This document shows positions 5,345-33,245 of a DNA stretch of 64,000 nucleotides, piece after piece. Under the pieces are notes generated by a model, which saw only the letters and a program-made list of their open reading frames with translations, was not told where the DNA came from and ran no database searches. Within the stretch, counting starts at the first letter, position 1; the number at the start of each line of letters is the position of its first letter. Location of the stretch: positions 22,630,001 to 22,694,000 of the forward strand of contig NW_027361727.1 of NCBI RefSeq assembly GCF_039654945.1. The letters run 5' to 3'. Origin of the DNA: Dendrobates tinctorius (taxonomy: Eukaryota). Both the position numbers and the translations under genes were made by a program.

Positions 5345-5375
5345 TCATTCCTTTCCTCCTGTAGAAGGGGTATCA

Positions 5376-5395: not shown

Positions 5396-5396
5396 G

Positions 5397-5815
5397 TGTA
5401 ACGGGGTCTTCCAAGCTGGGGTACCTCTTTCAGTACCACCCCGTGTTTTCTGAGGTCCGCTCTGCGTTGGCTGGAGTCTGAATGAATGACGCTGGCTGGA
5501 ATTCCTCTGAGTGCATGGACGCATATAAAAGATCACTGCTTCTCCACGTATTTCCAGTCTGACAACACTTTACTCACAGGACACAGAATATATATCACAC
5601 AGATACAGAGGGCAGGCCAATAGACAAGCGTCAGGCCAGACATGCATTACAAAAGCCGCAGGTGGCCGGAGCCTGCGGATGTTTACTGTGGGAATTACAA
5701 AGGTGGGGGGAGGGCGGACACTGCTGATACATTAGGGACATGCATCTCACTTTGAACCTATTATATATACATATAACTGCACAACATATTCTGGGTGCTG
5801 AGTGGTTCTGTAACA
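5397..5815 (-). repeat. LTR 2 (shared internal LTR, 419 bp)
   Basis: PBS on one side and PPT on the other; identical to LTR 1 except one extra G near the left end. Confidence 0.93.
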
Positions 5816-5891
5816 CGGCTCCCCCTTTTCAGCGACGCGATCGGCATACACAGTCTGATCCTCAACGGATCGGTTTGGGGATGACCGAAGT

Positions 5892-10373: not shown

Positions 10374-10425
10374 TCATTCCTTTCCTCCTGTAGAAGGGGT
10401 ATCAAATCCCGCTGGCTGCCACCAG

Positions 10426-10844
10426 TGTAACGGGGTCTTCCAAGCTGGGGTACCTCTTTCAGTACCACCCCGTGTTTTCTGAGGTCCGCTCTGCGTTGGC
10501 TGGAGTCTGAATGAATGACGCTGGCTGGAATTCCTCTGAGTGCATGGACGCATATAAAAGATCACTGCTTCTCCACGTATTTCCAGTCTGACAACACTTT
10601 ACTCACAGGACACAGAATATATATCACACAGATACAGAGGGCAGGCCAATAGACAAGCGTCAGGCCAGACATGCATTACAAAAGCCGCAGGTGGCCGGAG
10701 CCTGCGGATGTTTACTGTGGGAATTACAAAGGTGGGGGGAGGGCGGACACTGCTGATACATTAGGGACATGCATCTCACTTTGAACCTATTATATATACA
10801 TATAACTGCACAACATATTCTGGGTGCTGAGTGGTTCTGTAACA
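10426..10844 (-). repeat. LTR 3 (shared internal LTR, 419 bp)
   Basis: No difference from LTR 2 found by eye. Confidence 0.93.
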
Positions 10845-10920
10845 CGGCTCCCCCTTTTCAGCGACGCGATCGGCATACACAGTCTGATCCTCAACGGATC
10901 GGTTTGGGGATGACCGAAGT

Positions 10921-13900: not shown

Positions 13901-15403
13901 CAAGCCGACCTCAACAAGGCCATCCCCGACTCCCCAGTTCAGGTGAATCCTGGCAGTGGGTAGTCGATGTATGGCTCCCCCTGCTACACGGACTGCCACT
14001 GTCCGGTCCGTCTTCTCTTGGTCCCGGACGAGATGAGGCTTCACAAGGGTCAAAGTTGCCCCGGAATCTCTTAGTCCCTGCATACGTTTCCCATTAACCC
14101 ACACGACTTGTCGATGCTGTTGTCGATTATCTGCCCGGGCTGCCTGCACGGGGTCTACTTCATGCAGCACTTCCTCCATCTCTTCCACCCCTTGATTAAT
14201 CGTAGCCACCAATGCCGGGTCAGCTTCACCTTGGTAGCAGTGTACAGCAGCCCGGCTGAAGGTAGCTGTTCCCGCCTTTGGCCACTGGGTATGCTGAGTC
14301 CGGTTGGGGCATTGTCTTTGCAGGTGGCCCAGCTGACGACAGGTGTGGCATCGTGCCCCAGGGGGACTGTTGTAGGCCGGGTTTCTAGCTGGTCCCCCTA
14401 CAATCTTCGGTGGTTTGGGGCCCTCCAGGTTCATGGGCGGGCCCCTAGGGACCACCTTTGATCCGGACAACTGCGGCCTCCTGGCATCATGATGTTCATC
14501 GGCCAGACGAGCGGCTTCCTCAAGAGTCGTTGGCCGCCTGTCCCGAAGCCATTCCTGTGTCTCGGGGTTTAGTCCATTAAAGAATCGTTCTAACAGGAAG
14601 AGCTGGAGGACGTCCTCCTTAGTGGTTGCTTGGCTCCCTTGTACCCACTGTAGCAGTGACCGCCGTAATTTACAGGCCCGTTCAGCGTGGGTATCGGTTA
14701 CGCGTTTTATAAGTCCATGGAACTTTTGGCGGTAGGCCTCTGGTGTCAGCGCATATAGGGCCAAGATCACTTCTTTGATCTGCTCATAGTCCATACAGTC
14801 CTCATCAGGTACCATGCGATAGGCGTCCGCTGCCCGGCCTGTCAGCTTGCTGGCCAGAATCTGAACCCGTTCCTCCGGCTTTACTTGATGAAGAGCACAC
14901 TGCCGCTCAAAGTCCTGCAGAAAGCCATCAATGTCTTCCTCTGCCTCCCCCAACTGTCGGAAGGCATTGTACTGGATCTTTTTGTGGCTTACTGTTGAAG
15001 GTACCTGATCGAAGGCCAGAGCTCCCCCTGCTCGCTGACTCTCCTCTCTCCGCTCTGCCATCTCCATCTTGGCCAGCTCCACTTTGGTCCGCTCTGCCAT
15101 CTCCATCTTGGCTAGCTCTATCCTGGTCCGCTCGGCCATCTTTTCCTTCAGATCAGTACGCACATCAGCCATTACCTCTCGTATGATCTCCACTGCAGGG
15201 TTTGGGCCATGGAACGCCAGTCTGTTCTTTACCTCCCTCTGGAATTCGGTCTCCTCCACATTCACATTGGGGGGCGCTGCATTGTCGTGTTCCATGATGG
15301 CTGCTATCAAATCCGCTTTTGTTTTGTTGCTGGCGATCAACCCTCGGGCTTCCACCAGGTCTTTTAATGTAGTCCTCTTTAACTTCTGGTAATTATTTTC
15401 CAT
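10921..15403 (-). pseudogene. gag-pol of Gmr1-like copy 3, disrupted
   Basis: Same lesions (TAG 13217-13219, frameshift near 11780, TAG 11710-11712). Confidence 0.93.
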
Positions 15404-15455
15404 TCATTCCTTTCCTCCTGTAGAAGGGGTATCAAATCCCGCTGGCTGCCACCAG

Positions 15456-15874
15456 TGTAACGGGGTCTTCCAAGCTGGGGTACCTCTTTCAGTACCATCC
15501 CGTGTTTTCGGAGGTCCGCTCTGCGTTGGCTGGAGTCTGAATGAATGACGCTGGCTGGAATTCCTCTGAGTGCATGGGCACATTTAAAAGATCACTGCTT
15601 CTCCACATATTTCCAGTCTGACAACACTTTACTCAGAGGACACAGAATATATATCACACAGATACAGAGGGCCGGCCAATAGACAAGCGTCAGGCCAGAC
15701 ATGCATTACAAAAGCAGCAGGTGGCCGGAGCCTGCGTATGTTTACTGTGGGAATTACAAAGGTAGGGGGAGGGTGGACACTGCTGATACATTAGGGACAT
15801 GCATCTCACATGGAACCTATTATATATACATATAACTGCACAACATATTCTGGGTGCTGAGTGGTTCGGTAACA
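15456..15874 (-). repeat. LTR 4 (outer 5' LTR, 419 bp)
   Basis: About 15 substitutions relative to LTRs 1-3; followed by the TSD ATCTT. Confidence 0.93.
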
Positions 15875-16528: not shown

Positions 16529-16716
16529 ATACGTGGTGATATCTCGAGAAGAACGGGAGCAAAACCTCATGGCATTTCAGCACAGCGAGAAGATTTATTT
16601 CCGTGCGTGTCGTGACATTCATCCCGGAGAGAAGCTGCGGGTTTGGTACAGCGACGATTACATGAAAAGGCTGCATAGCATGTCTCAGGAGACAATCATT
16701 CGCAACCTCAGCAGAG
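16529..16716 (+). CDS. PRDM11: PRDM11 internal exon, C-terminal part of the PR/SET domain
   Basis: ttcag| acceptor and |gtaaga donor; [56 protein letters not shown] matches PRDM11 as I remember it; phase-1 end joins 20092 in frame. Confidence 0.92.
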
Positions 16717-19187
16717 GTAAGAGACGTGACTCATTACCTTTTTTCACTTGTGCTGTCTCTTGAGTTCCCTTCTTTGTGAATATTTATACTTTACTGCATA
16801 CATTAAAGGGAATCTAATATAGTCTTGTGAAATGTAATTATGACACTTTGATTGGCGACAAACAGTGATTTCTACCCAAACCTTAAAAGTAACCAAGTTT
16901 TAGTAAACCAGAGGCTTGAGCAGGTGCAAAAATTTAGTTTTAAATCCAGAAATAATTGGCATTTGTTTTCTCCAGTTTTAGGCGGCCATTTGGGCTAATT
17001 GCGAAAACCGGAAGTATAGCCCTAATATTTTTCTTTAAAACCGTCACTTATTATTAATACAGTGACAAGTTCCAATCCGAGAAGCTGGTGCAAAAGTGAC
17101 AACTAATTTTGCGGCACTTCCTGTCACCGCTTTTTCAAAATGGTTCGCACAACAAAACTGAAAAGTACCGATATGTCTGTGACCAAAAGGAATGTTGTCC
17201 TCAATATCTCTAACTTCTGCTTTGCTAATAAATGGTTAATTTAACATTTTGAGTCAAAATCCACTTTAAAGTGATTTCAAAATCTAGACTGACTGTCCCA
17301 CACCCATCCTTACTTATCCCGTCCTTTCTATTTGCATCAGTTTACTCCCACCCTCTAACAGTATGCTGATAGTGTACTTCGGAGTTGTACTGTCCCAAAA
17401 GAGGAAAGGAGCAACAGCGGTGCCCATGAGCCCCCGAAATGTTTCTTGTGCAATTTAAAGGGACATGCACCAGCACCATAACTGGACGGTGACCCCCCCA
17501 ATCACATCTACTGTGTGAATTAGCTCACAATGTAAAGGGTGGTAATATTATGCATGGTTGGTTCCCTTTAACTATGATGATTTTACAGTTATGCACCATG
17601 TGTACCTGGTTTTCTCATTTATTTTATTCTGTGTTGGAAAAAAATAGTATAAAATATGAAAACATATGTTCATATAATTAGTTTTCAAAGCCTCTTACCG
17701 GCTGCCTGAAAGTGTTTACTGCACCTGTTAATAACCTGTCTGACTTATGTACACTTTTATTACAGTCAAGTGTTTTTTTTTTTTCTTTTTGCTCCCTGTT
17801 ATCAGTCATATCAGGGAGGGAACAGTGTGACTGTAGCGATTTACAGTGGAATGATTATCAATAGAAAAAAATCTCCAAAAATACCCCCCAATAAGAAGCA
17901 CCTAACCTGTTATATTTTAAAGTGAGAAATATCCTAGATCATTTACATGTGATTGATTCGCCCTTATATTGCATAAACACCTTATTACGGACAGAGCTGG
18001 CTCCTCAGGGGCGGTGTCTAACACAAATTCCAAGAAAAGTATCTGTGTCATGCTCCACCCCCTCAGTCTCTACACTAGATCTAATACAGAAGTATTTGTT
18101 TTATCTGTGATGTTTTGTTAAAACCCTTAGTACATAACCTGTTTTGGCCTTCAGGACAAAGTGATTTATTTTTTTTATTTAATTTTTCAGTTTCTTACAT
18201 CACTTTTTTTCTTTTTTCCTCGTCAATTTAGGCATATTTATTTCATCTTGTATTTGCCAATCTGGTTATATTCTCAGTGGCTTTTTTTTTGGTTACTTTG
18301 GTTTCTTATGTCATTCATTGTGCAGTATAAATAATTATATCATGATGAATGTGGCGATGTACTATTTTGTTTTTATTTCACTATGACTGCCCTCTCTCAT
18401 GGGCAATACCGGTCAATTCTGACAGCGTGTGCACTGATTCAGAAGTATGCAGTCACATAGAGGGACTGCAGAGTTTTATCAGAAAACCGGGCAACCACTT
18501 TAAGATATAAAGCAAAAACTTGTTTTCCTGATCTCCGTACCTCCTGTTCCACCTAGACGGACTTGCCACTTTATGATTAGTGTTGGTTGACCGAATTTTA
18601 ACAACCCTACCTATCCTGAAATGAACGTGCCTCAGCATTTCTAAGGCTTCCCTCCACAGCAGCGCTCCCTCCAACATAATGAAAACTGAATAAAGTTGAC
18701 CCCTTCGCCTAATCGGTTCAGTGCTGCAGTTCCATGGCTGGGAGAGCTGCTAAGGAGGGAAGAAAACGGACTGGATCATAAAGTGATGATGATATATCTG
18801 AAATTTATATGGCTTTTTCTAGTTAGGTGAATTGGGGCTGTGTTGTACCTCTCTGCAGGAAGCAAAAAAAGACAAAACAGGCAAGCACATATAAAATAGA
18901 CTGAAAAAAAGGCGCAAATTAAAAGAACAATTAGATTCAAAGGCAAAAAATGGTGAAAAGCACCAATACTAGAAAGAAAAAGAAATCACATATGTGGTTA
19001 TAAATTGGGCCTTATTACTTTCGGAAGAAGAGGAGGAAAAAAATAAAAATAAAAATTGGCCATGACGGGAAGGTGTTAATGTCAAAGCACCAATAGTAGT
19101 AGTTGTTATTAGATGTTAGTACCAGTTGTCTACAATGTACAGTTCTGTGGTTCTCAAGCATCTCAGGCTTTTTGGTCATGACTCCAT

Positions 19188-19965
19188 TTCTAGTTGGGAG
19201 ATCCAAAGCATTGATCCAAATGTAGGCCTAGACCTATTGAGCGGGGTTATCAGAACCCTAGACCTATTGAGCGGGGTTATCAGAACTTAGGTAACCAATG
19301 TTCTAGTTGGGAGGTCCTAAGCATTGATCCAAATGTAGGCCTAGACCTATTGAGCGGGGTTATCAGAACCTAGGTAACCAATGTTCTAGTTGGAAGTTCC
19401 AAAGCATTGATCCAAATGTAGGCCTAGACCTCTTGAGCGGGGTTATCAGAACTTAGGTAACCAATGTTCTAGTTGGGAGTTCCAAAGCATTGATCCAAAT
19501 GTAGGCCTAGACCTATTGAGCGGGGTTATCAGAACCTAGGTAACCAATGTTCTAGTTGGGAGTTCCAAAGCATTGATCCAAATGTAGGCCTAGACCTCTT
19601 GAGCGGGGTTATCAGAACTTAGGTAACCAATGTTCTAGTTGGGAGTTCCAAAGCATTGATCCAAATGTAGGCCTAGACCTATTGAGCGGGGTTATCAGAA
19701 CCTAGGTAACCAATGTTCTAGTTGGGAGTTCCAAAGCATTGATCCAAATGTAGGCCTAGACCTCTTGAGCGGGGTTATCAGAACTTAGGTAACGAATGTT
19801 CTAGTTGGAAGGTCCTAAGCATTGATCCAAATGTAGGCCTAGACCTATTGAGCTGGGTTATCAGAACTTAGGTAACCAATGTTCTAGTTGGGAGGTCGTA
19901 ACCATTGATCCAAATGTAGGCCTAGACCTAATCCAGAGGGGTTATCCTAATTTAGATAACCAATG
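19188..19965. repeat. 83-bp minisatellite, about 9 units
   Basis: TTCTAGTTGGGAG...GGTAACCAATG starts at 19188, 19301, 19384, 19467, 19550, 19633, 19716, 19799 and about 19881. Confidence 0.92.
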
Positions 19966-20091
19966 TAATATGACACAATGGGTATTACCAAAGAATAATG
20001 GCCATCTTCTACTGAGGAAAGCTTAAAAAATGTAAGGCTTTAATAAGGGAACATGTGGCTATATGATAACACACCTAATTTTCCTTTCCAG

Positions 20092-20727
20092 GAGAAAGAG
20101 GTTTGTTAAGGGAAAACAATGACAGAATCTTGGAAAACCAAGAAGATGTGAAAGGCCCATTTCCACAAACTGCCCTTAAGCAAGGGAAGAGCCTCTACAA
20201 GCGAAGCTGTGAGGAGGGCGAGCTACACCCTCATACCAAGAAGAAAAAAATTGACTTAATCTTCAAAGATGTCTTGGAGGCTTCTCTAGAGTCTGCTAAA
20301 ATGGAAGACCATCCCCTGGTGACAAGTAGTCCTATACTCGGGAAGAAGGTTACTAAGTATCAGTATGAGAACCACGGAGATAGATGTAAAACAAGCCAAA
20401 AGTTTTCTGCCCCAAACCAAACCAGAATCTCAATGGAGTGGAAGGTCCCTCATGCTTCAGTTCAAGGTCTAGACAGGGATACCAACCTACCAGAAGATGA
20501 TCTAGAAGACCGCTCATCTATCAAAGTAGAAAGTCCTGATGAGTTCGCTGCCCTTGATGATACTGATGAAATCCCCACCACTTCTTTCTGCCCAAACTGT
20601 ATCAGGTTAAAGAAGAAAATCCGTGAGCTTCAGGCCGAGGTGGAAAGGCTAAGATCTGGAAAAGTCCCTGAAGTTCCTCAGTTGTTTCCTCAGAAAATTG
20701 AGGTTCCAGAGTTTTCCGATATCTCAG
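20092..20727 (+). CDS. PRDM11: PRDM11 penultimate coding exon, copy 1
   Basis: tttccag|GAGAAAG and CAG|gtatgg; KKKKIDLIFKDVLEASLESAK and PTTSFCPNCIRLKKK motifs. Read-through of the donor gives a short form stopping at 20789. Confidence 0.92.
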
Positions 20728-21027
20728 GTATGGAATTGGCACTTGCCGACAGTTTATGTTTAGTATTGTCTGTTCTCATGGTAGATTAGTTAGCTATCCT
20801 TGACACAACCAATTTACAGAACAAAAACTAGCTAGTCTTGGTATGTATTTTTTTAAATTTATGGGGTTCTTGGAGCCAATTTTTTTTTATAAAACAAAAG
20901 TTTTTAGTCTTACAGGGTCACATGGTGCATAATAATCTCTTTACTACCCATCTAATTTATTTCTTTTTAATGTCCAAGTGATTTTTTTCTTTTTTTTTGT
21001 TTTGATCTGTTGACTTTTGTCTCCCAG

Positions 21028-23184
21028 CTCCAGAAAACATGTCCATCGCACCCACAATAATGGAAGACGACGATCAGGAAGTAGACTCTGCAGACGAGTT
21101 GGTCTCCAATGAGATACTGGCATCTACCGACGAGCCTTCTAAGATGTCTGCATCTACCGGTAGACGGATCCGTCGCTTCAAGCAAGAATGGTTAAAAAAG
21201 TTCTGGTTCTTGAGATACTCGTCTACGTTGAATGAGATGTGGTGTCACGTTTGTAGGCAGTACACAGTGCAGTCCTCAAGGACTTCAGCTTTCATCATCG
21301 GTTCCAAACAGTTTAAGATTCACACTATAAAGCTCCACAGCCAAAGTAACCTCCACAAAAAATGTTTGCAGCTCTACATGCTCAGGATGCACCCCGAAAA
21401 GACAGAGGAAATGTGCAGGAACATGACTCTCCTTTTCAACACCGCATACCACTTGGCTATGGAAGGTAGGCCTTATTATGACTTCCGACCTCTAGCAGAA
21501 CTACTGAGAAAGTGTGAACTCCGCGTAGTTGACCAGTACATGAACGAAGGCGATTGTCAGATTTTGATTCATCACATCGCCAGAGCACTTAGAGAAGACT
21601 TAGTAGAGCGCATTCGACAATCTCCATTCCTAAGCATTATCTTAGATGGGCAAAGTGAAGAGCTTCTTGTCGATACGGTGGCAGTCTACGTCCAGTACAC
21701 CAGTAACGATGGCCCACCTGCCACAGAGTTTCTCTCTTTTCAAGAGCTGGGTTTGCCAACCACTGAGAGTTATCTCCAAGGCATTGACAGGGCTTTCTCA
21801 GCTCTTGGTATCCGACTGCAGGATGAGAGGCCAACCGTAGGGTTAGGAGTTGATGGAGCCAACATAACGGCTGGATTACGAGCAAATATGTATACGACAA
21901 TCAGGAAAACCTTGCCTTGGCTACTGTGTTTACCATTTATGGTACACAGGCCCCACTTAGAAATTTTGGATGCAATTAGTGGAAAAGAACTCCCTTGTTT
22001 AGAAGAATTAGAAAATAACCTGAAGCAGCTACTTAGTTTCTACCGGTACTCTCCCCGTCTGATGTGTGAACTTCGACTTACTGCTACAACCCTTTGCGAG
22101 GAAACAGAATTCCTAGGTGATATACGGGCAGTGAAATGGATAATAGGGGAGCAGAACGTGCTGAATGCTCTGATTAAGGACTACCTGGAAGTGGTGGCCC
22201 ATTTGAAAGACGTCAGCGTTCAAACACAACGAGCCGGCGCCTCCGCCATTGCATTAGCCCTCCTTCAGTTTCTCATGGATTATCAGTCAATTAAGCTTAT
22301 ATATTTCCTTTTGGATGTAATCGCGGTATTGTCCCGCTTGGCCTACGTCTTCCAGGGCGAGTACCTCTTGGTGTCCCAGGTGGATGAGAAAATAGAAGAA
22401 GCCATTCAAGAAGTCAGCCGCTTGACAGATTCTCCTGGGGAATATCTTCAGGAGTTCGAAGAAAACTTCAGGGAAAGTTTCAATGGGATCTCGTTGAAGA
22501 ATTTACGTGTGGCCGAAGCAAAGTTTCAGTCCATCCGTGAGAAGATTTGTCAGAAAACCCAACTCACCCTGGCCCAACGGTTTGATTCCCGAAGCCGAAT
22601 ATTTGTAAAAGCTTGCCAAGTTTTCGATTTGTCTATGTGGCCCCAGAGGACAGAGGAACTCATAGGCTATGGAGAGGAGGAAATGCTGCAAATATACGAA
22701 CACCTGAGTGGCATTCAGTCATTTCTTTCGGACTGCAGGGATGGTGCTGACACTAGAAGCGGCCTATTGATGGAATGGCGAGAGCTAAAGGCTGACTACT
22801 GTACCAAAAACGGTTTCAATTTAATAGACCATATCTGTAAGTACAAACAGAGATTCCTGCTCTTAAACAAGATAGTACAGATCCTAAAAGTCCTTCCCAC
22901 GTCTACGGCCTGCTGCGAAAAAGGGCGCAACGCTCTCCAAAGGCTGCGCAAAAACAACCGCTCAAGGCTGACTTTAGACCAGTTGAGCGACCTCTTGACC
23001 ATAGCCGTGAATGGACCGTCCATCTCTAATTTCGATGCCAAGAGACCTCTGGACGGTTGGTTTGAAGAAAAGTCAGGGAATAGCTACTCCTTGTCTGCCG
23101 AGATGCTCAGCAAGGTGTCTTCTCTGGACCAGAAACCCATGCTCCACTCTATGGAGCTAGGCTCTGAGTACTACCAAGACGTTT

Positions 23185-23186
<2 letters not shown>
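21028..23186 (+). CDS. PRDM11: PRDM11 terminal coding exon, copy 1 (ZNF862-like, hAT-transposase-derived: zinc-finger-like start, RNase-H-like core, hAT dimerisation-like end)
   Basis: ctcccag|CTCCAGAAAACATG in frame with the previous exon; RRFKQEWLKKFWFL..MWCHVC, SIILDG, GVDGAN, LPTSTACCEKG..RSRL; TAA at 23184-23186. Confidence 0.92.
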
Positions 23187-23220
<34 letters not shown>

Positions 23221-24041
23221 GGTCCTGAAGCTATTGGATATGTTTTTTTTCTATCTATACTCTTAAGTTTTTGGTATATTATAAAAAAAAAAATGTAAAA
23301 AATTAAATATATATAAATATATATTATATATATATATATTAATAGAAAAAAAAAATCCCACTAAATATTTACAAAAAGACTGAGCCTTTTCTTAGGAAAC
23401 CTTACAAATGGTATCACATTTTTCACCTATGGCAGCTGGAATGGTTTCCTTACGGCCAGAACAGGACAGAGAAACCACAAACCCTTTTCCCAAAGCATGT
23501 ACAATCCCGACCAGGTACCTTTTTTTTATATATACCCCTCTGTTTTGTTCATAGGCCAGAACAAACATTTGTATGTCAGGACCCCGGAAGTCCAAATCCA
23601 CAGAAATCGCTATAATTTTTTTTTTATATATATAATTTAATATATTTTTTATCCTAATTTGTATTCTCCTTTTATGTATTATGTTAAAAAAACAAACAAA
23701 GAAATATGTATCTTGTATCTAAAAATCACCAAATGGGCAAACTTTTATTTTCACTGCCCTATTGTCCCCAGGGTACAATGGCGGGGGTGCATTTGGGTCC
23801 AAAGCTGGCTAACCGCACCTCGGGGACTCTTCTTTCTAAGGACAAGCAATGTAGCAGTCACCCCAATGTTTATTATACCTGAATCACTTTCCTTTTACAA
23901 CACTTACAAAAGTTTTGTAATCACACACAATGTATACTTCTTGTATTGTTTGGGGATTTTATGGCAGAGCTTATGGTTAAAAAATATCTTTTAAATATAT
24001 ATATATTTTTTTTTCAATACTGTAATGTTTTAGCTTGTACG

Positions 24042-24179
24042 GATGTAGCAGAGCTGAGTTTGTAATTTGGCACAGTTTATTGGGATATCACATTGATAGC
24101 TAAATCTGTACTTTGCTTGGATTGACGGAGTGCCTAAAAAAAAAAAAATGTTAAATTGCAAACTCGGCTCTGCTACATC
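24042..24179. repeat. Short inverted-repeat (MITE-like) element downstream of the stop; paralogous copy at 30301-30440
   Basis: GATGTAGCAGAGCTGAGTTTGTAATTT ... AAATTGCAAACTCGGCTCTGCTACATC, arms about 27 bp. Confidence 0.6.
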
Positions 24180-26389
24180 TCTATATTTTGTGAAATAAAA
24201 GAATAAGATAAGGTTTTCCAGTCCATAGTGGGTAAATGATACAGTTTTTAAGGGAAACTGGGATCCGGTTTGTAAGAAAGGAAAATTAATAAAGGGGTAT
24301 TCCTATCCACTTATCCCGTCCTTTCTATTTGCATCAGTTTACTCCCACCCTCTAACAGTATGCTGATAGTGTACTTCAGAGTTGTACTGTCCCAACAGAG
24401 GAAAGGAGCCACAGCGGTGCCCATGAGCCCCAGAAATGTTTCTTGTGCAATTTAAAGGGACATGCACCAGCACCATAACTGGACGGTGACCCCCCCCCCC
24501 CCCCAATCACATCTACTGTGTGAGTTAGCTCACAATGTAAAGGGTGGTAATATTATGCATGGTTGGTTCCCTTTAATTATGATTTTTTAGTTATGCACCA
24601 TGTGTACCTGGTTTTGTCATTTATTTTATTCTGTAAATGTTGCAAAAAATAGTATAAAATATGAAAACATATGTTCATATAATTAGTTTTCAAAGCCTCT
24701 TACTGGCTGCCATAAAGTGTTTGCTGCACCTGTGAATAACCTATCTGGCCTATGTGCACTTTTATTACAGTCAAGTGTTTTTTTTTTCTTTTTGCTCCCT
24801 GTTATCAGTCATATCAGGGAGGGAACAGTGTGACTGTAGCGATTTACAGTGGAATGATTATCAATAAAAAAAAATCTCCAAAAATCCCCCCCCAATAACA
24901 AGCACCTAACCTGTTATATTTTAAAGTGAGAAATATCCTAGATCATTTACACGTGATTGATTCACCCTTATATTGCATAAACACCTTATTATGGACAGAG
25001 CTGGCTCCTCGGGGGCGGTGTCTAACACAGATTCCAAGAAAAGTATCTGCGTCATGCTCCACCCCCTCTGTCTGTTCACTAGACCTAATACAGAAGTGTC
25101 AATTTTATCTGAAATGTTTTGTTAAAACCCTTAGTACGTAATTTGTTTTGGCCTTCAGGACACAGTGATTTTTGTATTTTAATTTTTCAGTTTCTTACAT
25201 CACTTTTTTCTTTTTTCCTCTTCAATTTAGGCATATTTATTTCATCTTGTATTTGCCAATCTGGTTATATTCTCAGTGGCTTTTTTTTTGGTTACTTTGG
25301 TTTCTTATGTCATTCATTGTGCAGTATAAATAATTATATCATGATGAATGTGGCGATGTACTATTTTGTTTTTATTTCACTATGACTGCCCTCTCTCACG
25401 GGCAATACCGGTCAATTCTGACAGCGTGTGCACTGATTCAGAAGTATGCAGTCACATAGAGGGACTGCAGAGTTTTATCAGAAAACCGAGCAACCTCTTT
25501 AAGATATAAAGCCAAAACTGGTTTTCCTGATCTCCGTACCTCCTGTTCCACCTAGACGGACTTTCCACTTTATGATTAGTGTTGGTCGGCCGAATTTTAG
25601 CAACCCTACCTATCCTGAGAATGAACGTGCCTCAGCATTTCTAAGGCTTCCCTCCACAGCAGCGCTCCCTCCAACATAATAAAAACCGAATAAAGTTGAC
25701 CCCTTTGATTAAACGGTTCAGTGCTGCAGTTCCATGGCTGGGAGAGCTGCTAAGGAGGGAAGAAAACGGACTGGATCATAAAGTGATGATGATATATCTG
25801 AAATTTATATGTCTTTTTCTAGTTAGGTGAATTGGGGCTGTGTTGTACCTCTCTGCAGGAAGCAAAAAAAAACAAAACAGGCAAGCACATATAAAATAGA
25901 CTTAAAAAAGGCGCAAATTAAAAGAAAAATTAAATTCAAAGGCAAAAAATGGTGAACAGAACCAATACTAGAAAGAAAAAGAAAGCACATATGCGGTTAT
26001 AAATTGGGCCTTATTACTTTCGGAAGAAGAGGAGGAAAAAAATAAAAATTGGAGACGACTGGAAGGTGTTAAGGTCAAACCACCAATAGTAATAGTTATT
26101 ATTAGATGTTATTACCAGTTGTCTACAATGTACAGTTCTGTGGTTCTCTAGCATCGCAGACGTTTTTGGTCATGACTCATTTCTAGTTGGGAGGTCCAAA
26201 GCATTGATCCAAATGTAGGCCTAGACCTATTGAGCGGGGTTATCAGAACTTAGGTAACCAATGTAATATGACACAATGGGTATTACCAAAGAATAATGGC
26301 CATCTTCTACTGAGGAAAGCTTAAAAAATGTAAGGCTTTAATAAGGGAACATGTGGCTATATGATAACACACCTAATTTTCCTTTCCAG

Positions 26390-27025
26390 GAGAAAGAGGT
26401 TTGTTAATGGAAAACAATGACAGAATCTTTGAAAACCATGAAGATGTGAAAGGCCCATTTCCACAAACTGCCCTTAAGCAAGGGAAGAGCCTCTACAAGC
26501 GAAGCTGTGAGGAGGGCGAGCTACACCCTCATACCAAGAAGAAAAATATTGATTTAATCTTCAAAGATGTCTTGGAGGCTTCTCTAGAGTCTGCTAAAAT
26601 GGAAGACCATCCCCTGGTGACAAGTAGTCCTATACTCGGGAAGAAGGTTCCTAAGTATCAGTATGAGAACCACAGAGATAGATGTAAAACAAGCCAAAAG
26701 ATTTCTGCCCCAAACCAAACAAGAATCTCAATGGAGTGGAAGGTCCCTAATGCTTCCGTTCAAGGTCTAGACAGGGATACCAACCTACCAGAAGATGATC
26801 TAGAAGACCGCTCATCTTTCAAAGTAGAAAGTCCTGATGAGTTCGCTGCCCTTTTTGATACTGTTGAAATCCCCACCACTTCTTTCTGCCCAAACTGTAT
26901 GAGGTTAAAGAAGAAAATCCGTGAGCTTCAGGCCGAGGTGGAAAGGCTAAGATCTGGAAAAGTCCCTGAAGTTCCTCAGTTGTTTCCTAATAAAACTGAG
27001 GTTCCAGAGTTTTCCGATATCTCAG
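26390..27025 (+). CDS. PRDM11: PRDM11 penultimate coding exon, duplicate copy 2
   Basis: 636 bp as in copy 1; splice sites intact; open frame. Expression unknown. Confidence 0.75.
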
Positions 27026-27323
27026 GTATGGAATTGGCACTTGCCGACAGTTTACGTTTAGTATTGTCTGTTCTCATGGTAGATTAGTTAGCTATCCTTG
27101 ACACAACCAATCTACAGAACAAAAACTAGCTAGTCTTGGTATGTATTTTTTTAATTTATGGGGTTCTTGGAGGCAAAATTTTAATAAAACAAAAGCTTTT
27201 AGTCTTACAGGGTCACATGGTGCATAATAATCTCTTTACTACCCATCTATTTTTTTTCTTTTCAATGTCCAAGTGAAATTTTTTATTTTTTTTGATCTGT
27301 TGACTTTTGTCTCCCTGCTCCAG

Positions 27324-29479
27324 AAAACATGTCCATCGCACCCACAATAATGGAAGACGACGATCAGGAAGTAGACTCTGCAGACGAGTCGGTCTCCATT
27401 GAGATACTGGCATCTACCGACGAGCCTTCTAAGATATCTTCATCTACCGGTAGACGGATCCGTCGCTTCAAGCAAGAATGGTTAAAAAAGTTCTGGTTCT
27501 TGAGATACTCGTCTACGTTGAATGAGATGTGGTGTCACGTTTGTAGACAGTACACAGTGCAGTCCTCAAGGACTTCAGCTTTCATCATCGGTTCCAAACA
27601 GTTTAAGATTCACACTATAAAGCTCCACAGCCAAAGTAACCTCCACAAAAAATGTTTGCAGCTCTACATGCTCAGGATGCACCCCGAAAAGACAGAGGAA
27701 ATGTGCAGGAACATGACTCTCCTTTTCAACACCGCATACCACTTGGCTATGGAAGGTAGGCCTTATTATGACTTCCGACCTCTAGCAGAACTACTGAGAA
27801 AGTGTGAACTCCGCGTAGTTGACCAGTACATGAACGAAGGCGATTGTCAGATTTTGATTCATCACATCGCCAGAGCACTTAGAGAAGACTTAGTAGAGCG
27901 CATTCGACAATCTCCATTCCTAAGCATTATCTTAGATGGGCAAAGTGAAGAGCTTCTTGTCGATACGGTGGCAGTCTACGTCCAGTACACCAGTAACGAT
28001 GGCCCACCTGCCACAGAGTTTCTCTCTTTTCAAGAGCTGGGTTTGCCAACCACTGAGAGTTATCTCCAAGGCATTGACAGGGCTTTCTCAGCTCTTGGTA
28101 TCCGACTGCAGGATGAGAGGCCAACCGTAGGGTTAGGAGTTGATGGAGCCAACATATCGGCTGGATTACGAGCAAATATGTATATGACAATCAGGAAAAC
28201 CTTGCCTTGGCTACTGTGTTTACCATTTATGGTACACAGGCCCCACTTAGAAATTTTGGATGCAATTAGTGGAAAAGAACTTCCTTGTTTAGAAGAATTA
28301 GAAAATAACCTGAAGCAGCTACTTAGTTTCTACCGGTACTCTCCCCGTCTGATGTGTGAACTTCGACTTACTGCTGCAACCCTTTGCGAGGAAACAGAAT
28401 TCCTAGGTGATATACGGGCAGTGAAATGGATAATAGGGGAGCAGAATGTGCTGAATGCTCTGATTAAGGACTACCTGGAAGTGGTGGCCCATTTGAAAGA
28501 CGTCAGCGGTCAAACACAACGAGCCGGCGCCTCCGCCATTGCATTAGCCCTCCTTCAGTTTCTCATGGATTATCAGTCAATTAAGCTTATATACTTCCTT
28601 TTGGATGTAATCGCGGTATTGTCCCGCCTGGCCTACGTCTTCCAGGGCGAGTATCTCTTGGTGTCCCAAGTGGATGAGAAAATAGAAGAAGCCATTCAAG
28701 AAGTCAGCCGCTTGACAGATTCTCCTGGGGAATATCTTCAGGAGTTCGAAGAAAACTTCAGGGAAAGTTTCAATGGGATCTCCTTGAAGAATTTACGTGT
28801 GGCCGAAGCAAAGTTTCAGTCCATCCGTGAGAAGATTTGTCAGAAAACCCAACTCACCCTGGCCCAACGGTTTGATTCCCGAAGCCGAATATTTGTAAAA
28901 GCTTGCCAAGTTTTCGATTTGTCTATGTGGCCCCAGAGGACAGAGGAACTCATAGGCTATGGAGAGGAGGAAATGCTGCAAATATACGAACACCTGAGTG
29001 GCATTCAGTCATTTCTTTCCGACTGCAGGGATGATGCTGACACCAGAAGCGGCCTATTAATGGAATGGCGAGAGCTAAAGGCTGACTACTGTACCGAAAA
29101 CGGTTTTAAAGATTTAATAGGCCATATCTGTAAGTACAAACAGAGATTCCTGCTCTTAAACAAGATAGTACAGATCCTAAAAGTCCTTCCCACGTCTACG
29201 GCCTGCTGCGAAAAAGGGCGCAACGCTCTCCAAAGGCTGCGCAAAAACAACCGCTCAAGGCTGACTTTAGACCAGTTGAGCGACCTCTTGACCATAGCCG
29301 TGAATGGACCGTCCATCTCTAATTTCGATGCCAAGAGACCTCTGGACGGTTGGTTTGAGGAAAAGTCAGGGAATAGCTACTCCTTGTCTGCCGAGATGCT
29401 CAGCAAGATGTCTTCTCTGGACCAGAAACCCATGCTCCACTCTATGGAGCTAGGCTCCGAGTACTACCAAGACGTTTAA
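27324..29479 (+). CDS. PRDM11: PRDM11 terminal ZNF862-like exon, duplicate copy 2
   Basis: 716-aa open frame. The original acceptor is mutated (ctccctg, 27316) but the next AG (27322-27323) is in frame. Expression unknown. Confidence 0.72.
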
Positions 29480-32039
29480 ACTTTTTTTTTTTTTTTTGCA
29501 GCCCTGAAGCTATTGGATGTTTTTTTTCTATCTATACTCTAGTTTTTGGTATATTATAAAAAAATGTAAAAAATTAAATATATATATTATATATATTAAT
29601 AGAAAAAAAAAAATCCCACTAAATATTTACCAAAAGACTGAGCCTTTTCTTAGGAAACTTTACAAATGGTATCACATTTTTCACCTATGGCAGCTGGAAT
29701 GGTTTCGTTATGGCCAGAATAGGACAGAGAAACCACAAACCCTTTTCCCAAAGCATGTACAATCCCGAGCAGGTACCTTTTTTTATACATACCCCTCTGT
29801 TTTGTTCATAGGCCAGAACAAACATTTGTATGTCAGGACCCCGGAAGTCCAAATCCACATAAATCACTATAATATATATATATATTATAATTTAATCTAT
29901 GTTTTATCCTAATTTGTATTCTCCTTTTATGTATTATGTTAAAAAAAAAACAAAACAAATATGTATCTTGTATCTAAAAATCACCAAATGGGCAAACTTT
30001 TATTTTCACTGCCTCTCTGTCCCCAGGGTACAATGGCGGGGGTGCATTTGGGTCCAAAGCTGGCTAACCGCACCTCGGGGAGACTCTTCATTCTAACGAC
30101 AAGCACTGTAGCAGTCACCCCAATGTTTATTATACCTGAATCACTTTCCTTTTACGACACTTACAAAAGTTTTGTAATCACACACAATGTATACTTCTTG
30201 TATTGTTTGGGGAATTTATGGCAGAGTTTATGTTTAAAAAATATTTTTTAAATATATATATATATTTTTTTCTTAATACTGTAATGTTTTAGCTTGTACA
30301 GATGTAGCAGAGCTGATTTTGTAATTTGGCACAGTTTATTGGGCTATCACATTGATAGCTGAATCTGCACTTTCCTTGGATTGACGGAGTGCCTAAAGAA
30401 AAAAAAAAAAGTTAAATTGCAAACTCGGCTCTGCTACATCTCTATATTGCTGCGGAGAGAATTCATTTTGTGAAGTAAAAGAATAAGCTAAGGTTTTCCA
30501 GTCCATAGTGGGTACATGATACAGTTTTTAAGGAAAACTGAGATCCGGTTTGTAAGAAAGGAAAATTAATAAAGGGGTATTCCTATCCACTTACCACCGA
30601 TGTGGCAATGCGACGGGGAGCCTAGGTGGTCTTCACTAATGGTTCCATTTCTCCACGCCATATTAGAAGACGACAGTGTTACGATGAGAGACTCCATTCT
30701 CAGAACCCTGGTCCACCGGCCCGACGGGAGCCCTTAGCTACGTCCTCCTATATTGCCGTCATCCTCAGTGTCTCTTCTGATTAGCGGGCCCAGTGCAACA
30801 TCATGAGTGTGTCACTATGCAGAAGAGGCGCTGGGGATGCCAACAGGTAGGAGTCAGTTTGTCGGACTCCCATCGGATCGCCATGGACTACTAATGTGGC
30901 CGCCGGATCAGGGAACAACAAATCAATTCGCTCATCTATAGCGGGGATCTCTGTTACCGATTTACAGTTCAAAGAGTTGTGCAGCACTGCTATTATTGGG
31001 ATAGGTCATCAGTATCAGATCAGTGGTGATCCGACACCGATCACCGTTAGAAAGGTACAGATCCAGAACAGCTCAGCTACTGTGGAAGTGAATGTGATCT
31101 GAGCTGCAGTACCCGAGAATGGCCACTACACAGTGTACGGCGCTGTGCTGGTTCTGTACACTGTGAATCTACGTTGGCGGCAGGACCAACTGATCAGCAA
31201 AGATTCCAACTGTCAGACCGCCACCAATCTGATCCCCAAATCTTAGTGTTGGTCAAAAAGTTAGAAAATGGGAGTCTGACTTTTGGGACCTTCAACAAGG
31301 GGCACCTAAAAAAAGGGGGATATTGTACAGAGCCCCTGCTCCAAAAAATTCTCTCTATGGGAGATATGGAAAAGGACCACTGTTCTCATAACCTAGCACA
31401 TCTAAGTTGGGGCTGGTGACTCCAGTTCTTTTGATTAAAGTAGGCCTCTGGGAATAGGTGATTCTTATTTTAAGCTGGAATACCTCTTTAAGGGGATTTT
31501 CTCAATAGAACTGGTGGCTGTTCCGTGTGATTGTCTCCCCATTTAGAGGTGATAGTCCATATGCCCTAATAGGACGTGCAGCGAGGAGTTGTCTTCTTGA
31601 GTCAATCCCCTTAAGTTTTCCTTTCTTCTAGATCCAGTCCCAGTTTTTGCAAAAAAAAAACAACTGCAACTGAACTGCGTGGTGTGTGAACTCAACTGTC
31701 ACATAATCCTTATTCAAAGCAGCTACTTCCTGTCCTGTAATGTAAGAATGTGAGGCCCGACTCTGCCACCATGGTTACTAGCATGCTGCAATATGCAGGC
31801 ATCCTTTATAAAAATCGAAAAAATATATCAATAAAATGAGATAAAATGCCTGCAGTAAGCCAGTTCTTTGTGTGTACGCCTTGTATGTTCCATATCATAT
31901 TGTCTAATATAATTCTGTGTGTAGGTTACGTCAGTGACTGAAAGCCATGCGTCTGGCATCCAACAAGGCAATATAATAATGTACCAGTTTAAATGCCAGC
32001 CTGATCTCTATGAGGCAGTGCTACATAAATAGTGGAGGC

Positions 32040-32610
32040 ATTACTGATCCTGAGTTACATCCTGTATTATACTCCAGAGCTGCACTCACTATTCTGCTGG
32101 TGCAGTCACTGTGTACACACATTACATTACTGATCCTGAGTTACATCCTGTATTATACTCCAGAGCTGCACTCACTATTCTGCTGGTGCACTCACTGTGT
32201 ACATACATTACATTACTGATCCTGAGTTACCTCCTGTATTATACCCCAGAGCTGCACTCACTATTCTGCTGGTGCAGTCACTGTGTACATACATTACATT
32301 ACTGATCCTGAGTTCCATCCTGTATTATACCCCAGAGCTGCGCTCACTATTCTGCTGGTGCAGTCACTGTGTACATACATTACATTACTGATCCTGAGTT
32401 ACATCCTGTATTATACTCCAGAGCTGCACTCACTATTCTGCTGGTGCAGTCACTGTGTACATACATTACATTACTGATCCTGAGTTACATCCTGTATTAT
32501 ACTCCAGAGCTGCACTCACTATTCTGCTGGTGCAATCACTGTGTACATACATTACATTACTGATCCTGAGTTACATCCTGTATTATACTCCAGAGCTGCA
32601 CTCACTATTC
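32040..32610 (+). repeat. 86-bp minisatellite, about 6.5 units
   Basis: Unit ATTACTGATCCTGAGTTACATCCTGTATTATACTCCAGAGCTGCACTCACTATTCTGCTGGTGCAGTCACTGTGTACATACATTAC. Confidence 0.93.
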
Positions 32611-33245
32611 TATATACTGCTGAGCATTGTGAAAATCTGGGCATGACCAAGTGACCTGGAACTGGTTACTAGGGATATGCTGCCTAACAATGCAGTATAA
32701 TCTATAGTGTTCCTTTAGCATGCAGATTAACTCAGATGTCTCTGCTTTTTGTCTCTATGTCAGATGCCTGAGCTTTGCTCCTTACCTGCAGCCTGTTTTC
32801 TCTGCCCTCCCTGAGACTGTACACACATTCTCTGTTCCCCATACTGTGGAAATCTGCTGTTCCTGCCGCTAAGAAGAGTGAGGGGAGAGCAGAGAGAGAT
32901 TTCGGGAATTCTTGATGGAATTGTAACATTTTTGTAGATCATTTACATAAAAGGCTTAGATATGTTATTGTGCATCAGCAAAATGGTAGAAAATTTCTAA
33001 TGAAGACTAAAAATGTGCTTGATTTTGTATTTTAGGATTTAAATGAGCCATCTTAAAAATTAAGTGTAAAGGTTGGCTCTAGATATAGTTTACTAAAAAT
33101 GTAGCTTTTTACAATTACCTTTAAAATTTCATTTTTGATGAATGGCAATTCTCGGGTTTACCGCAACAGAGAGGAGCCAGAAGACCATAGAATCAGATTT
33201 CTTCTCCTGCACTGATTAGAAGCACTTCACCTTCATATTAAACGG

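What the first reader, a model, noticed from the sequence alone, without database searches (positions are those of the whole stretch)
17312..30593. Intragenic tandem duplication gives PRDM11 two alternative, open transposase-derived 3' ends
Seen: a 6.3-7.0 kb unit holding the 636-bp exon, the ~2.15-kb ZNF862-like terminal exon and 3' flank is duplicated head to tail, with a 5-bp ACTTA microhomology junction. The PR/SET exon is not duplicated. Both copies keep full reading frames despite many indels in the flanking non-coding DNA, and the only coding indel is one codon. Established: the long PRDM11 form ends in a hAT-transposase-like region. Inference: one PR/SET head could be spliced to either tail (16716 to 20092 or 26390; 20727 to 21028, 26390 or 27324, all phase 1), giving alternative last-exon isoforms with diverging tails. 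I do not know of a description of this arrangement. It is the strongest candidate for new biology in the window.
Basis: partly seen in the sequence, partly recalled or inferred. Interest (0 to 1): 0.85.

Follow-up and report, generated by a model that had tools for sequence, protein, structure and literature searches.

The report
Duplicated 3' end of frog PRDM11
In a poison-frog-like genome the last two coding exons of PRDM11, including its domesticated hAT-transposase tail, were copied head to tail a few million years ago; both copies are still open, but whether the second is ever used is unproven, so this is a real, young and fairly ordinary kind of gene-structure change.

Summary
Copy 1 (17312-24308) and copy 2 (24309-30593) are head-to-tail repeats with a clean ACTTA junction and no assembly gap. 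Each carries the 636-bp cassette exon, the about 2.16-kb terminal exon and 1.1 kb of 3' flank. The gene is PRDM11 of a dendrobatid-like frog. The tail has a hAT transposase fold (best PDB matches: Hermes). Nanorana, Eleutherodactylus and Engystomops have one copy, so the duplication is lineage-specific.

Non-coding divergence between copies is 4.3-5.1%, against 3.0% in the cassette exon and 1.2% in the terminal exon. There is one in-frame coding indel.

- **Copy 1:** cassette exon stays at background constraint.
- **Copy 2:** cassette exon has 13 derived non-synonymous and 0 synonymous changes, and the conserved acceptor of its terminal exon is lost (CAG to CTG). An in-frame AG lies 6 nt downstream.
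- **Both terminal exons:** omega is 0.25 and 0.51, against a background of 0.035.

My reading is a genuine microhomology-mediated tandem duplication. The proximal unit is the main 3' end. The distal tail was kept under weaker selection, probably as a minor alternative last exon. No transcript evidence could be obtained. Tandem-duplicated 3' exons are a known class, so interest is moderate to low.

The parts
16529..16716 (+). PRDM11 exon coding the end of the PR/SET domain (aa about 184-249 of frog PRDM11). It is single copy. The donor GT is at 16717 and leaves phase 1.
   Evidence: tblastn with Bufo bufo PRDM11 gives 94% identity. The acceptor and donor were read directly.
17312..24308 (+). 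Duplication unit, copy 1 (proximal), 6997 bp. It holds part of the intron, the cassette exon, a short intron, the terminal exon and 1.1 kb of 3' flank.
19257..19966 (+). 83-bp minisatellite in the copy-1 intron, 8.5 units. About one unit remains in copy 2, which accounts for the 695-bp difference in unit length.
20092..20727 (+). 636-bp cassette exon, copy 1. Splice sites are intact and constraint is at background level (omega 0.18; 2 non-synonymous and 3 synonymous derived changes).
21028..23186 (+). Terminal coding exon, copy 1: hAT-transposase-derived tail with the conserved CAG acceptor. It has 7 derived amino-acid changes plus one codon deletion. Omega is 0.25.
23187..24308 (+). 3' flank (probable 3' UTR) of copy 1. 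Poly(A) hexamers lie at 23302 (ATTAAA), 24194 and 24288 (AATAAA). The last one is 21 nt before the junction.
24309..24313 (+). ACTTA junction microhomology. The same pentamer is at 17312-17316 and 30589-30593.
24309..30593 (+). Duplication unit, copy 2 (distal), 6285 bp.
26390..27025 (+). 636-bp cassette exon, copy 2. Splice sites are intact and the frame is open, but it carries 13 derived non-synonymous and 0 synonymous changes, at the neutral rate.
27324..29479 (+). Terminal coding exon, copy 2. The ancestral acceptor AG (27316-27317) is now TG. The next AG gives an in-frame start at 27324, which drops 2 aa. It has 6 derived amino-acid changes, no indel, and omega 0.51.
29480..30593 (+). 3' flank of copy 2, with ATTAAA at 29573 and AATAAA at 30568. 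The latter block is conserved as ATTAAA in E. coqui. Conservation with E. coqui stops about 10 nt before the breakpoint.

Best explanation
This is a genuine, lineage-specific tandem duplication inside PRDM11 of a dendrobatid-like frog. A 6.3-7 kb segment was copied head to tail by a replication or repair event that joined on 5 bp of microhomology. The segment runs from 595 bp inside the intron after the last PR/SET exon to about 20 nt past a conserved poly(A) hexamer.

From synonymous divergence, and an assumed age of about 65 My for the hyloid radiation, the event is roughly 5-8 My old (inference).

The gene now has one PR/SET head followed by two modules, each made of a cassette exon, a hAT-derived terminal exon, a 3' UTR and poly(A) signals.

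The proximal module is transcribed first and keeps the conserved acceptor and a constrained cassette exon. It is the principal 3' end.

The distal terminal exon can be reached only when the proximal acceptor and poly(A) sites are skipped. The join would come from the donor at 16716 or 20727 to the shifted acceptor at 27324, or pass through the distal cassette exon. This distal exon has been kept open and under weakened purifying selection, so it most likely serves as a minor alternative last exon. It encodes a tail that differs at 14 positions.

The distal cassette exon appears dispensable. Redundancy between the two tails would explain why both terminal exons evolve 7-15 times faster at the protein level than the frog background.

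Shown here: the structure, the junction, absence of the duplication in three other frogs, the hAT fold, and the substitution patterns. Inferred: the mechanism of duplication, the date, and any use of the distal tail.
For: **Structure and junction:**. There is no gap in the window.

**Single copy elsewhere:** Nanorana, E. coqui (two assemblies) and Engystomops each have one copy, with 10 kb of downstream flank searched.

**Placement:** c1 and c2 group together (97% support) inside Dendrobatidae.

**Divergence between copies:**
- Introns 4.6-5.1%.
- 3' flank 4.3%.
- Cassette exon 3.0%.
- Terminal CDS 1.2%.
- The drop in divergence coincides with the CDS boundaries.

**Synonymous yardstick:** in codons 280-718 the c1-c2 dS is 0.046, the same as the introns, while dN is 0.009.

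**Distal terminal exon:** it has 11 derived substitutions, against 36-50 expected at the non-coding rate (P about 1e-6 or less), and no indel.

**Indels:** there are 30 non-coding indel events against 1 in-frame coding indel. Even counting only the roughly 7 non-repeat-context indels as the neutral rate, P is about 0.02.

**Branch codon model (my own GY94 implementation), terminal exon:**
- Background omega 0.035.
- c1 omega 0.25, above background (P=9e-4) and below 1 (P=0.019).
- c2 omega 0.51, above background (P=3e-4).
- Both copies being neutral is rejected (P=0.013).

**Same model, cassette exon:** c1 omega 0.18 equals background. c2 has 13 non-synonymous and 0 synonymous changes.

**Splicing and 3' end:** all joins are phase 1 and in frame. 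Both copies carry the same poly(A) hexamers.
Against: - No RNA evidence of any kind. Neither tail sequence nor a close relative of the copy-2 cassette exon is in the protein or contig collections.
- Copy 2 lost the acceptor that is conserved in c1 and in three outgroup frogs.
- Its cassette exon evolves at the neutral rate.
- The codon model cannot reject omega=1 for the copy-2 terminal exon (P=0.47).
- A 609-bp stretch with no difference (21258-21866, P=0.003) suggests at least one gene-conversion tract. Conversion contributes to the low divergence and could mimic constraint.
- Both tips and the pre-duplication stem (6 unique changes), and also Ranitomeya (22 changes), are fast. Part of the relaxation may therefore predate the duplication.
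- A proximal strong acceptor plus poly(A) signals would normally capture most transcripts.
Confidence: 0.55

Rival explanations
1. The duplication is real, but the distal module is a dead relic. Transcripts end at the proximal poly(A) sites and copy 2 is never translated. On this view its open frame and low divergence reflect youth plus gene conversion from copy 1.
For: - The canonical acceptor of the copy-2 terminal exon is destroyed.
- The copy-2 cassette exon has 13 derived non-synonymous changes at the neutral rate.
- Omega of the copy-2 terminal exon is not distinguishable from 1 (P=0.47).
- A 609-bp identical tract is compatible with conversion.
- The proximal unit has every signal needed to terminate the mRNA.
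Against: - Low divergence is confined to the CDS and returns to 4-5% within a few hundred bases on either side.
- Outside the identical tract, dS equals the intron divergence, so conversion has not reset that part. Yet copy 2 has only 3 derived amino-acid changes there, against 13-23 expected under neutrality.
- Copy 2 has no indel in 2.8 kb of coding sequence.
- Copy 1 itself shows relaxed constraint: 7 changes and a codon loss at sites invariant in 13 frogs. That is unexpected if copy 1 alone carried the function.
Confidence: 0.3
2. Assembly artefact: two haplotypes, or a mis-joined repeat, of a single-copy region were placed in tandem (false duplication).
For: - This cannot be excluded without reads.
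- Large frog genomes are repeat-rich, and the same locus holds other tandem arrays.
- A true haplotig of this gene exists in the Hyla sarda annotation.
Against: - There is no gap or N anywhere in the window.
- The breakpoints are sharp, with 5-bp microhomology, inside unique intron and 3'-flank sequence.
- Non-coding divergence is 4.6%, with 31 indels and a 695-bp minisatellite difference.
- There are 29 amino-acid differences, many at sites invariant across frogs, distributed asymmetrically between the copies. That is not expected of alleles.
- The Hyla haplotig, by contrast, is 100% identical at the protein level.
Confidence: 0.05
3. The distal module is an independent transcription unit. 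It would produce a stand-alone hAT-derived protein from the ATG at 27329, with or without the cassette exon, rather than a PRDM11 isoform.
For: - The terminal exon carries its own in-frame ATG 5 nt into the exon (ORF 27329-29479).
- Annotated PRDM11 products without a PR domain exist in other species (P0088).
- This would explain why the tail is constrained while the acceptor and cassette exon are not.
Against: - There is no CpG island or other promoter-like composition between the copies.
- The sequence upstream of copy 2 is ordinary duplicated intron.
- No supporting transcript or protein was found.
Confidence: 0.07

Closest known systems
Tandem duplicated exon substitution events that swap homologous C-termini (tandem-duplicated 3' exons, for example tropomyosin genes; Martinez-Gomez et al. 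2022, PMC9741552; Ivanov and Pervouchine 2022, PMC9013439)
   Same: Homologous exons lie in tandem in one gene, in the same orientation and with compatible phase, and each terminal copy has its own stop and poly(A) signals. According to PMC9741552, C-terminal swaps are the enriched class (77 of 236 human events).
   Different: Most described events are ancient (many over 500 My), well expressed and strongly conserved. This one is a few My old and restricted to one frog lineage. It duplicates two exons (2.8 kb of CDS) including a whole folded domain, shows relaxed constraint in both copies, and has no expression evidence.
Canonical vertebrate PRDM11 (long form of about 1178 aa, and a 966-aa form lacking the 636-bp cassette exon)
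   Same: Exon A, the cassette exon and the tail are 94-98% identical to dendrobatoid and other hyloid PRDM11. The 212-aa cassette-exon isoform difference is the same as in other frogs.
   Different: Nanorana, E. coqui and Engystomops have one cassette exon and one terminal exon. Here both are doubled.
Host-transposase fusion genes such as SETMAR (a SET domain fused to a mariner transposase). This comparison comes from my own knowledge, not from a tool result.
   Same: A histone-methyltransferase-type head is joined by splicing to a domesticated DNA-transposase body. The tail here has the Hermes (hAT) fold and keeps the aligned D, D, E and W positions.
   Different: The transposase superfamily differs (hAT, not mariner). 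The fusion is old and shared across tetrapods. The novelty here is only the later duplication of the transposase-derived module.
False haplotypic duplications in long-read assemblies (from my own knowledge of the assembly literature)
   Same: Two similar copies of a gene segment lie next to each other in an assembly.
   Different: The usual hallmarks were tested and are absent: near identity, adjacency to gaps or contig ends, and large block size.

Membership tests
PRDM11 orthologue | C-terminal part of the PR/SET domain is encoded upstream in the same orientation | tested here: met
   Exon 16529-16716 is 94-98% identical to aa 184-246 of frog PRDM11. The more N-terminal exons lie outside the window.
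PRDM11 orthologue | A 636-bp cassette exon and a long terminal exon that are orthologous to those of other frogs | tested here: met
   The cassette exon is 85-93% identical and the tail 94-97.6% identical to hyloid PRDM11. The tree places c1 and c2 inside Dendrobatidae.
hAT transposase-derived domain | RNase-H-like catalytic core with an inserted helical domain, as in Hermes | tested here: met
   The AlphaFold2 model has mean pLDDT 83.4. The top 12 Foldseek PDB hits are all Hermes transposase, with E from 3.5e-8 to 5e-6, TM (target) 0.50-0.63, and about 530 aligned columns or more.
hAT transposase-derived domain | C-terminal hAT dimerisation domain (Pfam PF05699) | tested here: inconclusive
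   In the PRDM11 tail itself the match is below threshold (E=0.027, 14.7 bits against a cut-off of 21.4; residues 591-654). However, 31 of the 43 alignment members match it, which in practice means 31 of the 42 remote homologues.
hAT transposase-derived domain | N-terminal zinc finger and the D, D, E catalytic positions | tested here: met
   zf-C17orf113 passes Pfam's cut-off. D203, D272, E627 and W367 align with near-invariant columns of 42 homologues. Other near-invariant residues have been lost: C300F, D207E, R366K, S435A, R628K and F630R. Catalytic activity was not tested.
Tandem-duplicated alternative 3' exons (alternative last exons with homologous C-termini) | Homologous terminal exons in tandem, in the same orientation, with compatible phase, each with a stop codon and a poly(A) hexamer | tested here: met
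Tandem-duplicated alternative 3' exons (alternative last exons with homologous C-termini) | Both exons are actually used in mature transcripts, in a mutually exclusive way | not testable with these tools
   No transcript data for this species could be reached. Exact look-ups and homologue searches found nothing from it.
Tandem-duplicated alternative 3' exons (alternative last exons with homologous C-termini) | Purifying selection acts on both copies | tested here: inconclusive
   For c1, omega is 0.25 and below 1 (P=0.019). For c2, omega is 0.51 and not different from 1 by the codon model, yet c2 has 3-4 times fewer substitutions than its flanks and no indel. The copy-2 cassette exon is not constrained.
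Microhomology-mediated tandem duplication | Head-to-tail copies with a few bp of shared sequence at the junction and no longer homology at the breakpoints | tested here: met
   ACTTA is present at 17312, 24309 and 30589. The flanks are unrelated beyond it.
False haplotypic duplication (assembly artefact) | Allelic-level similarity of the copies and adjacency to gaps or contig ends | tested here: not met
   Non-coding divergence is 4.6% with 31 indels, and there are 29 amino-acid differences. There is no N in the window.
False haplotypic duplication (assembly artefact) | Half read depth and no reads spanning the junction | not testable with these tools
   No read data are available.
Processed retrocopy | Loss of introns, a poly(A) tail and target-site duplications | tested here: not met
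   Both introns are retained in copy 2, and there is no A-tract at the junction.

The most novel reading that the evidence does not exclude
The duplication has split PRDM11's two ancestral isoforms between two tails. The long, cassette-containing form would end in the proximal tail. A cassette-less form would splice from the PR/SET exon (or from the proximal cassette exon) directly to the shifted acceptor of the distal tail.

On this reading the distal cassette exon is either bypassed or under positive selection (13 non-synonymous against 0 synonymous changes; omega above 1 at P=0.008). It would be a very young case of isoform subfunctionalisation by terminal-exon duplication, caught within a few million years of its birth.

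The distal breakpoint lies about 20 nt after the conserved poly(A) hexamer. That may have altered the downstream element of the proximal site and favoured read-through.
Probability: 0.15. Interest if true: 0.6.

Novelty: new member of a known kind. Interest (0 to 1): 0.35.

Why it matters
If the distal tail is used, this locus shows the earliest stage of a process normally seen only after hundreds of millions of years: the birth of homologous alternative C-termini by tandem duplication of 3' exons. The duplicated unit is an entire domesticated transposase domain of a chromatin regulator. The locus would allow direct tests of how splice-site and poly(A) competition and relaxed selection shape a newborn alternative last exon. 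If the distal copy is silent, the finding is an ordinary young partial gene duplication, of interest mainly for annotation, since gene predictors may report spurious isoforms or a partial ZNF862-like gene.

Tried and rejected
**Look-ups and searches that found nothing**
- Exact look-ups of both tail ORFs in the contig and protein collections found nothing. No independent assembly or transcript of this species was available.
- A homologue search with the copy-2 cassette exon, meant to catch spliced or genomic Logan fragments of this or a sister species, gave 84% identity at best.
- A sequence search of the PDB with the tail gave no hit. Only the fold search worked.
- Literature searches for PRDM11 with transposase or ZNF862 found no description of the tail or of this duplication. 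One paper suggests a Harbinger Myb-like origin for part of human PRDM11, which is unrelated to the hAT tail tested here.

**Genomic DNA that could not be fetched**
- Bufo bufo and Pseudophryne: the files are too large.
- Dendropsophus isoform X3 and Anomaloglossus: not on record.
- As a result, no dendrobatoid locus could be compared, and the duplication cannot be dated against close relatives.

**Readings considered and rejected**
- Retrocopy origin: rejected because the introns are retained.
- Non-allelic recombination between repeats: rejected because the only shared sequence at the breakpoints is 5 bp.
- An internal promoter: no CpG island lies between the copies.
- The 83-bp intron minisatellite and the 86-bp downstream satellite are unrelated.

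**Technical failures**
- The first codon-model script timed out.
- One run failed on an interpreter-path error.
- One tblastn run returned nothing because my script truncated its own query file.
- All three were repeated correctly.

Full report
**1. The observation**

A direct-repeat scan and a self-BLAST of the window show two head-to-tail units. Segment 17312-19256 pairs with 24309-26249 at 94.1%, and 19882-24313 pairs with 26181-30593 at 95.8%.

A global alignment gives units of 6997 and 6285 bp with 31 indel events. The largest is a 695-bp difference in an 83-bp minisatellite, which has 8.5 units in copy 1.

The left edge of copy 1, the junction and the right edge of copy 2 all carry ACTTA. 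Sequence on the outer sides of these points is unrelated. The window contains no N.

Each unit holds a 228-aa ORF and a 715- or 716-aa ORF. The pairs are 213/228 and 702/716 identical, with a single one-codon gap.

**2. What the sequence is**

The long ORF is 95-96% identical to PRDM11 of hyloid frogs and 88% identical to that of birds and turtles. tblastn with Bufo PRDM11 locates the exons:
- One upstream exon, 16529-16716 (end of the PR/SET domain), which is single copy.
- The 636-bp exon, at 20092-20727 and 26390-27025.
- The terminal exon, at 21028-23186, with its counterpart ending at 29479.

Frog annotations list forms of 1178 aa and 966 aa that differ by exactly 212 aa. The 636-bp exon is therefore a known cassette exon.

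The closest proteins are Phyllobates terribilis (97.5%) and Anomaloglossus (97%). Shared derived residues and a maximum-likelihood tree place the window's species inside Dendrobatidae, next to Ranitomeya, with the two copies as sisters at 97% support.

**3. Is the tail transposase-derived?**

Pfam finds only zf-C17orf113 above threshold, plus a sub-threshold hAT dimerisation match.

An exhaustive profile-free search found 2433 relatives at 20-30% identity. In a 43-row alignment of the tail with 42 full-length relatives, 31 rows match Dimer_Tnp_hAT, 33 match zf-C17orf113 and 12 match DUF4371. The alignment shows the usual hAT motifs.

The PRDM11 tail keeps the aligned D203, D272, E627 and W367. 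It has replaced several other near-invariant residues.

An AlphaFold2 model (pLDDT 83.4) has Hermes transposase as its 12 best PDB matches. Catalytic activity remains untested.

**4. Is the duplication ancestral?**

Genomic loci of Nanorana parkeri, Eleutherodactylus coqui (two assemblies) and Engystomops pustulosus each have one cassette exon and one terminal exon. None has a second copy within 10 kb downstream. The duplication is therefore derived in the window's lineage.

Loci of closer relatives could not be fetched.

At all 14 tail positions where the copies differ, the other dendrobatoids almost always carry the ancestral residue. The two exceptions are D600 in Ranitomeya, which matches copy 1, and S397 in Phyllobates, a third state. 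This fits a duplication after the split from Phyllobates and Ranitomeya.

**5. Divergence pattern**

| Region | Divergence between copies |
|---|---|
| Upstream intron | 4.6% |
| Short intron | 5.1% |
| 3' flank | 4.3% |
| Cassette exon | 3.0% |
| Terminal CDS | 1.2% |

The changes in divergence fall at the CDS boundaries.

There are 30 indel events in non-coding sequence against one in-frame indel in 2.8 kb of coding sequence. Most non-coding indels lie in homopolymer or microsatellite context. A conservative expectation for coding sequence is therefore about 5.7 events, which gives P about 0.02.

Differences were polarised with three outgroup genomes:

| Exon | Copy 1 | Copy 2 |
|---|---|---|
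| Cassette exon | 2 non-synonymous, 3 synonymous | 13 non-synonymous, 0 synonymous |
| Terminal exon | 7 non-synonymous, 9 synonymous, plus one codon deletion | 6 non-synonymous, 5 synonymous |

Nearly all the amino-acid changes hit sites that are invariant in 13 other frogs.

A GY94 branch model that I wrote gives the following. For the terminal exon:
- Background omega is 0.035.
- c1 omega is 0.25, above background (P=9e-4) and below 1 (P=0.019).
- c2 omega is 0.51, above background (P=3e-4) and not different from 1 (P=0.47).

For the cassette exon:
- Background omega is 0.18, and c1 equals it.
- c2 omega is unbounded, and above 1 at P=0.008.

A 609-bp stretch without any difference (21258-21866) is unlikely by chance (P=0.003). 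That region also has about half the usual synonymous rate among species. The evidence for a conversion tract is therefore moderate.

In the remaining C-terminal 439 codons, dS between the copies is 0.046, the same as in the introns, while dN is 0.009. There the low protein divergence reflects selection, not conversion.

Copy 2's terminal exon has 11 derived substitutions where 36-50 are expected at the flanking rate.

**6. Splice and 3'-end signals**

Both cassette exons keep identical acceptor and donor contexts.

The terminal-exon acceptor CAG is conserved in copy 1, E. coqui, Engystomops and Nanorana. In copy 2 it is CTG. An AG 6 nt downstream keeps the frame and removes two residues.

Both copies carry ATTAAA about 100 nt after the stop and AATAAA about 1100 nt after it. 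The latter block is conserved in E. coqui, where it reads ATTAAA. Conservation with E. coqui ends about 10 nt before the breakpoint. The duplicated segment therefore seems to end almost exactly at the probable mRNA 3' end.

In copy 1 the sequence downstream of that hexamer is now intron sequence. No CpG island lies between the copies.

**7. Interpretation**

The sharp microhomology junction, the absence of gaps, the 4.6% non-coding divergence and the asymmetric, non-allelic pattern of amino-acid change make an assembly artefact unlikely. For contrast, a true haplotig of this gene in Hyla sarda is 100% identical at the protein level.

The proximal module has every conserved signal and a constrained cassette exon, so it is the main 3' end.

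The distal terminal exon behaves as a sequence that has been translated. Its frame is open, it has no indel, it shows a substitution deficit confined to the CDS, and there are few amino-acid changes where dS is at the neutral level. It also shows signs of reduced importance: the shifted acceptor and an omega that cannot be separated from 1 by codons alone.

The distal cassette exon is unconstrained. Both tails are relaxed 7-15 fold relative to background. This fits redundancy after duplication, although the fast stem and the long Ranitomeya branch leave room for an earlier, clade-wide relaxation.

The most economical model has the distal tail as a minor alternative last exon, probably used without its own cassette exon. 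The main rival is a silent relic partly homogenised by conversion.

From dS (0.03-0.046 between the copies against 0.42 to E. coqui), and an assumed age of about 65 My for the hyloid radiation (my own knowledge), the duplication is roughly 5-8 My old.

**8. Comparison with what is known**

Tandem-duplicated exons that substitute for one another are a described class. In the human set, swaps of homologous C-termini are the enriched category, at 77 of 236 events (PMC9741552).

This locus fits that class structurally. It differs in being very young and lineage-specific, in comprising two exons and a whole folded domain, and in lacking expression evidence. I found no paper describing the PRDM11 tail duplication. 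It is best filed as a new member of a known kind.

**9. Limits**

- No reads, transcripts or close-relative genomes were reachable.
- The codon model is my own implementation, not PAML.
- Counts are small.
- Polarisation of non-coding changes was not possible.

Noticed in passing
window 368-15874 (minus strand): Three tandem copies (period 5029 bp, 99.6-99.8% identical) of a Ty3/gypsy-type LTR retrotransposon share LTRs in the pattern LTR-int-LTR-int-LTR-int-LTR. They sit in the PRDM11 intron upstream of the PR/SET exon. The gag carries a SCAN-like capsid, and the domain order is PR-IN-RT-RNaseH, as in Gmr1-like elements (that comparison is from my own knowledge). LTRs 1-3 are identical, whereas LTR4 (15456-15874) differs by about 3.8%. 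This points to an older insertion followed by very recent tandem amplification, a second local tandem duplication in the same gene.
   Followed up: partly
window 24288-24313 and 30568-30593: The distal breakpoint of the duplication lies 21 nt after an AATAAA that is conserved as ATTAAA in E. coqui. This is also where 3'-flank conservation with E. coqui stops. The duplicated segment therefore ends almost exactly at the probable mRNA 3' end, and copy 1's poly(A) site has acquired a new downstream sequence.
   Followed up: partly
window 21258-21866: A 609-bp stretch of the terminal exon has no difference between the copies (P=0.003). This may be a gene-conversion tract. The same region has about half the synonymous divergence of the rest of the exon among frog species.
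   Followed up: yes
window 32039-32611 (+) and 43005-44990 (-): An 86-bp satellite occurs in two arrays of opposite orientation, with 6.7 and 23 units. The same satellite lies downstream of PRDM11 in E. coqui and Engystomops, so its position is conserved across hyloid frogs.
   Followed up: partly
window 45941-47747: A 31-bp tandem repeat of about 59 units creates long spurious ORFs on both strands (436-509 aa) and a meaningless weak PAXX Pfam hit.
   Followed up: partly
window 59993-63834 (+) and 61395-61904: A second, degraded Ty3/gypsy element (protease, RNase H, integrase core and SH3 domains in separate ORFs) is interrupted by a 250-bp-arm palindrome. The arms are 95% complementary with a 10-nt spacer.
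   Followed up: partly
window 56718-57623: Another tandem array, with a period of about 42 bp and about 89% identity between units, was seen in the self-BLAST.
   Followed up: no
L004 29004-30523 (Engystomops pustulosus, about 8 kb downstream of PRDM11): An ORF 37-42% identical to the PRDM11 tail lies here. It is a separate hAT-like sequence sitting next to the gene in another frog.
   Followed up: no
P0003 (Ranitomeya variabilis PRDM11 isoform X3): The tail has about 22 lineage-specific amino-acid changes, against about 3 in Phyllobates and Anomaloglossus. The annotated protein also carries extra N-terminal Pfam domains. Either constraint on the tail is relaxed more widely in this clade, or the annotation or locus there is also unusual.
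   Followed up: no
window 21039-23186 (tail ORF residues 203, 272, 627, 367): The domesticated hAT tail of PRDM11 keeps the aligned D, D, E and W positions of active hAT transposases in both copies. It has lost the near-invariant C of the CxxH motif (C300F) and several other conserved residues.
   Followed up: partly
P0129 and P0130 (Hyla sarda): Two annotated loci, one on a chromosome and one on a 77-kb unplaced scaffold, encode 100% identical PRDM11 C-terminal sequence. This is probably an uncollapsed haplotig, and it is named 'zinc finger protein 862-like' in that annotation.
   Followed up: partly
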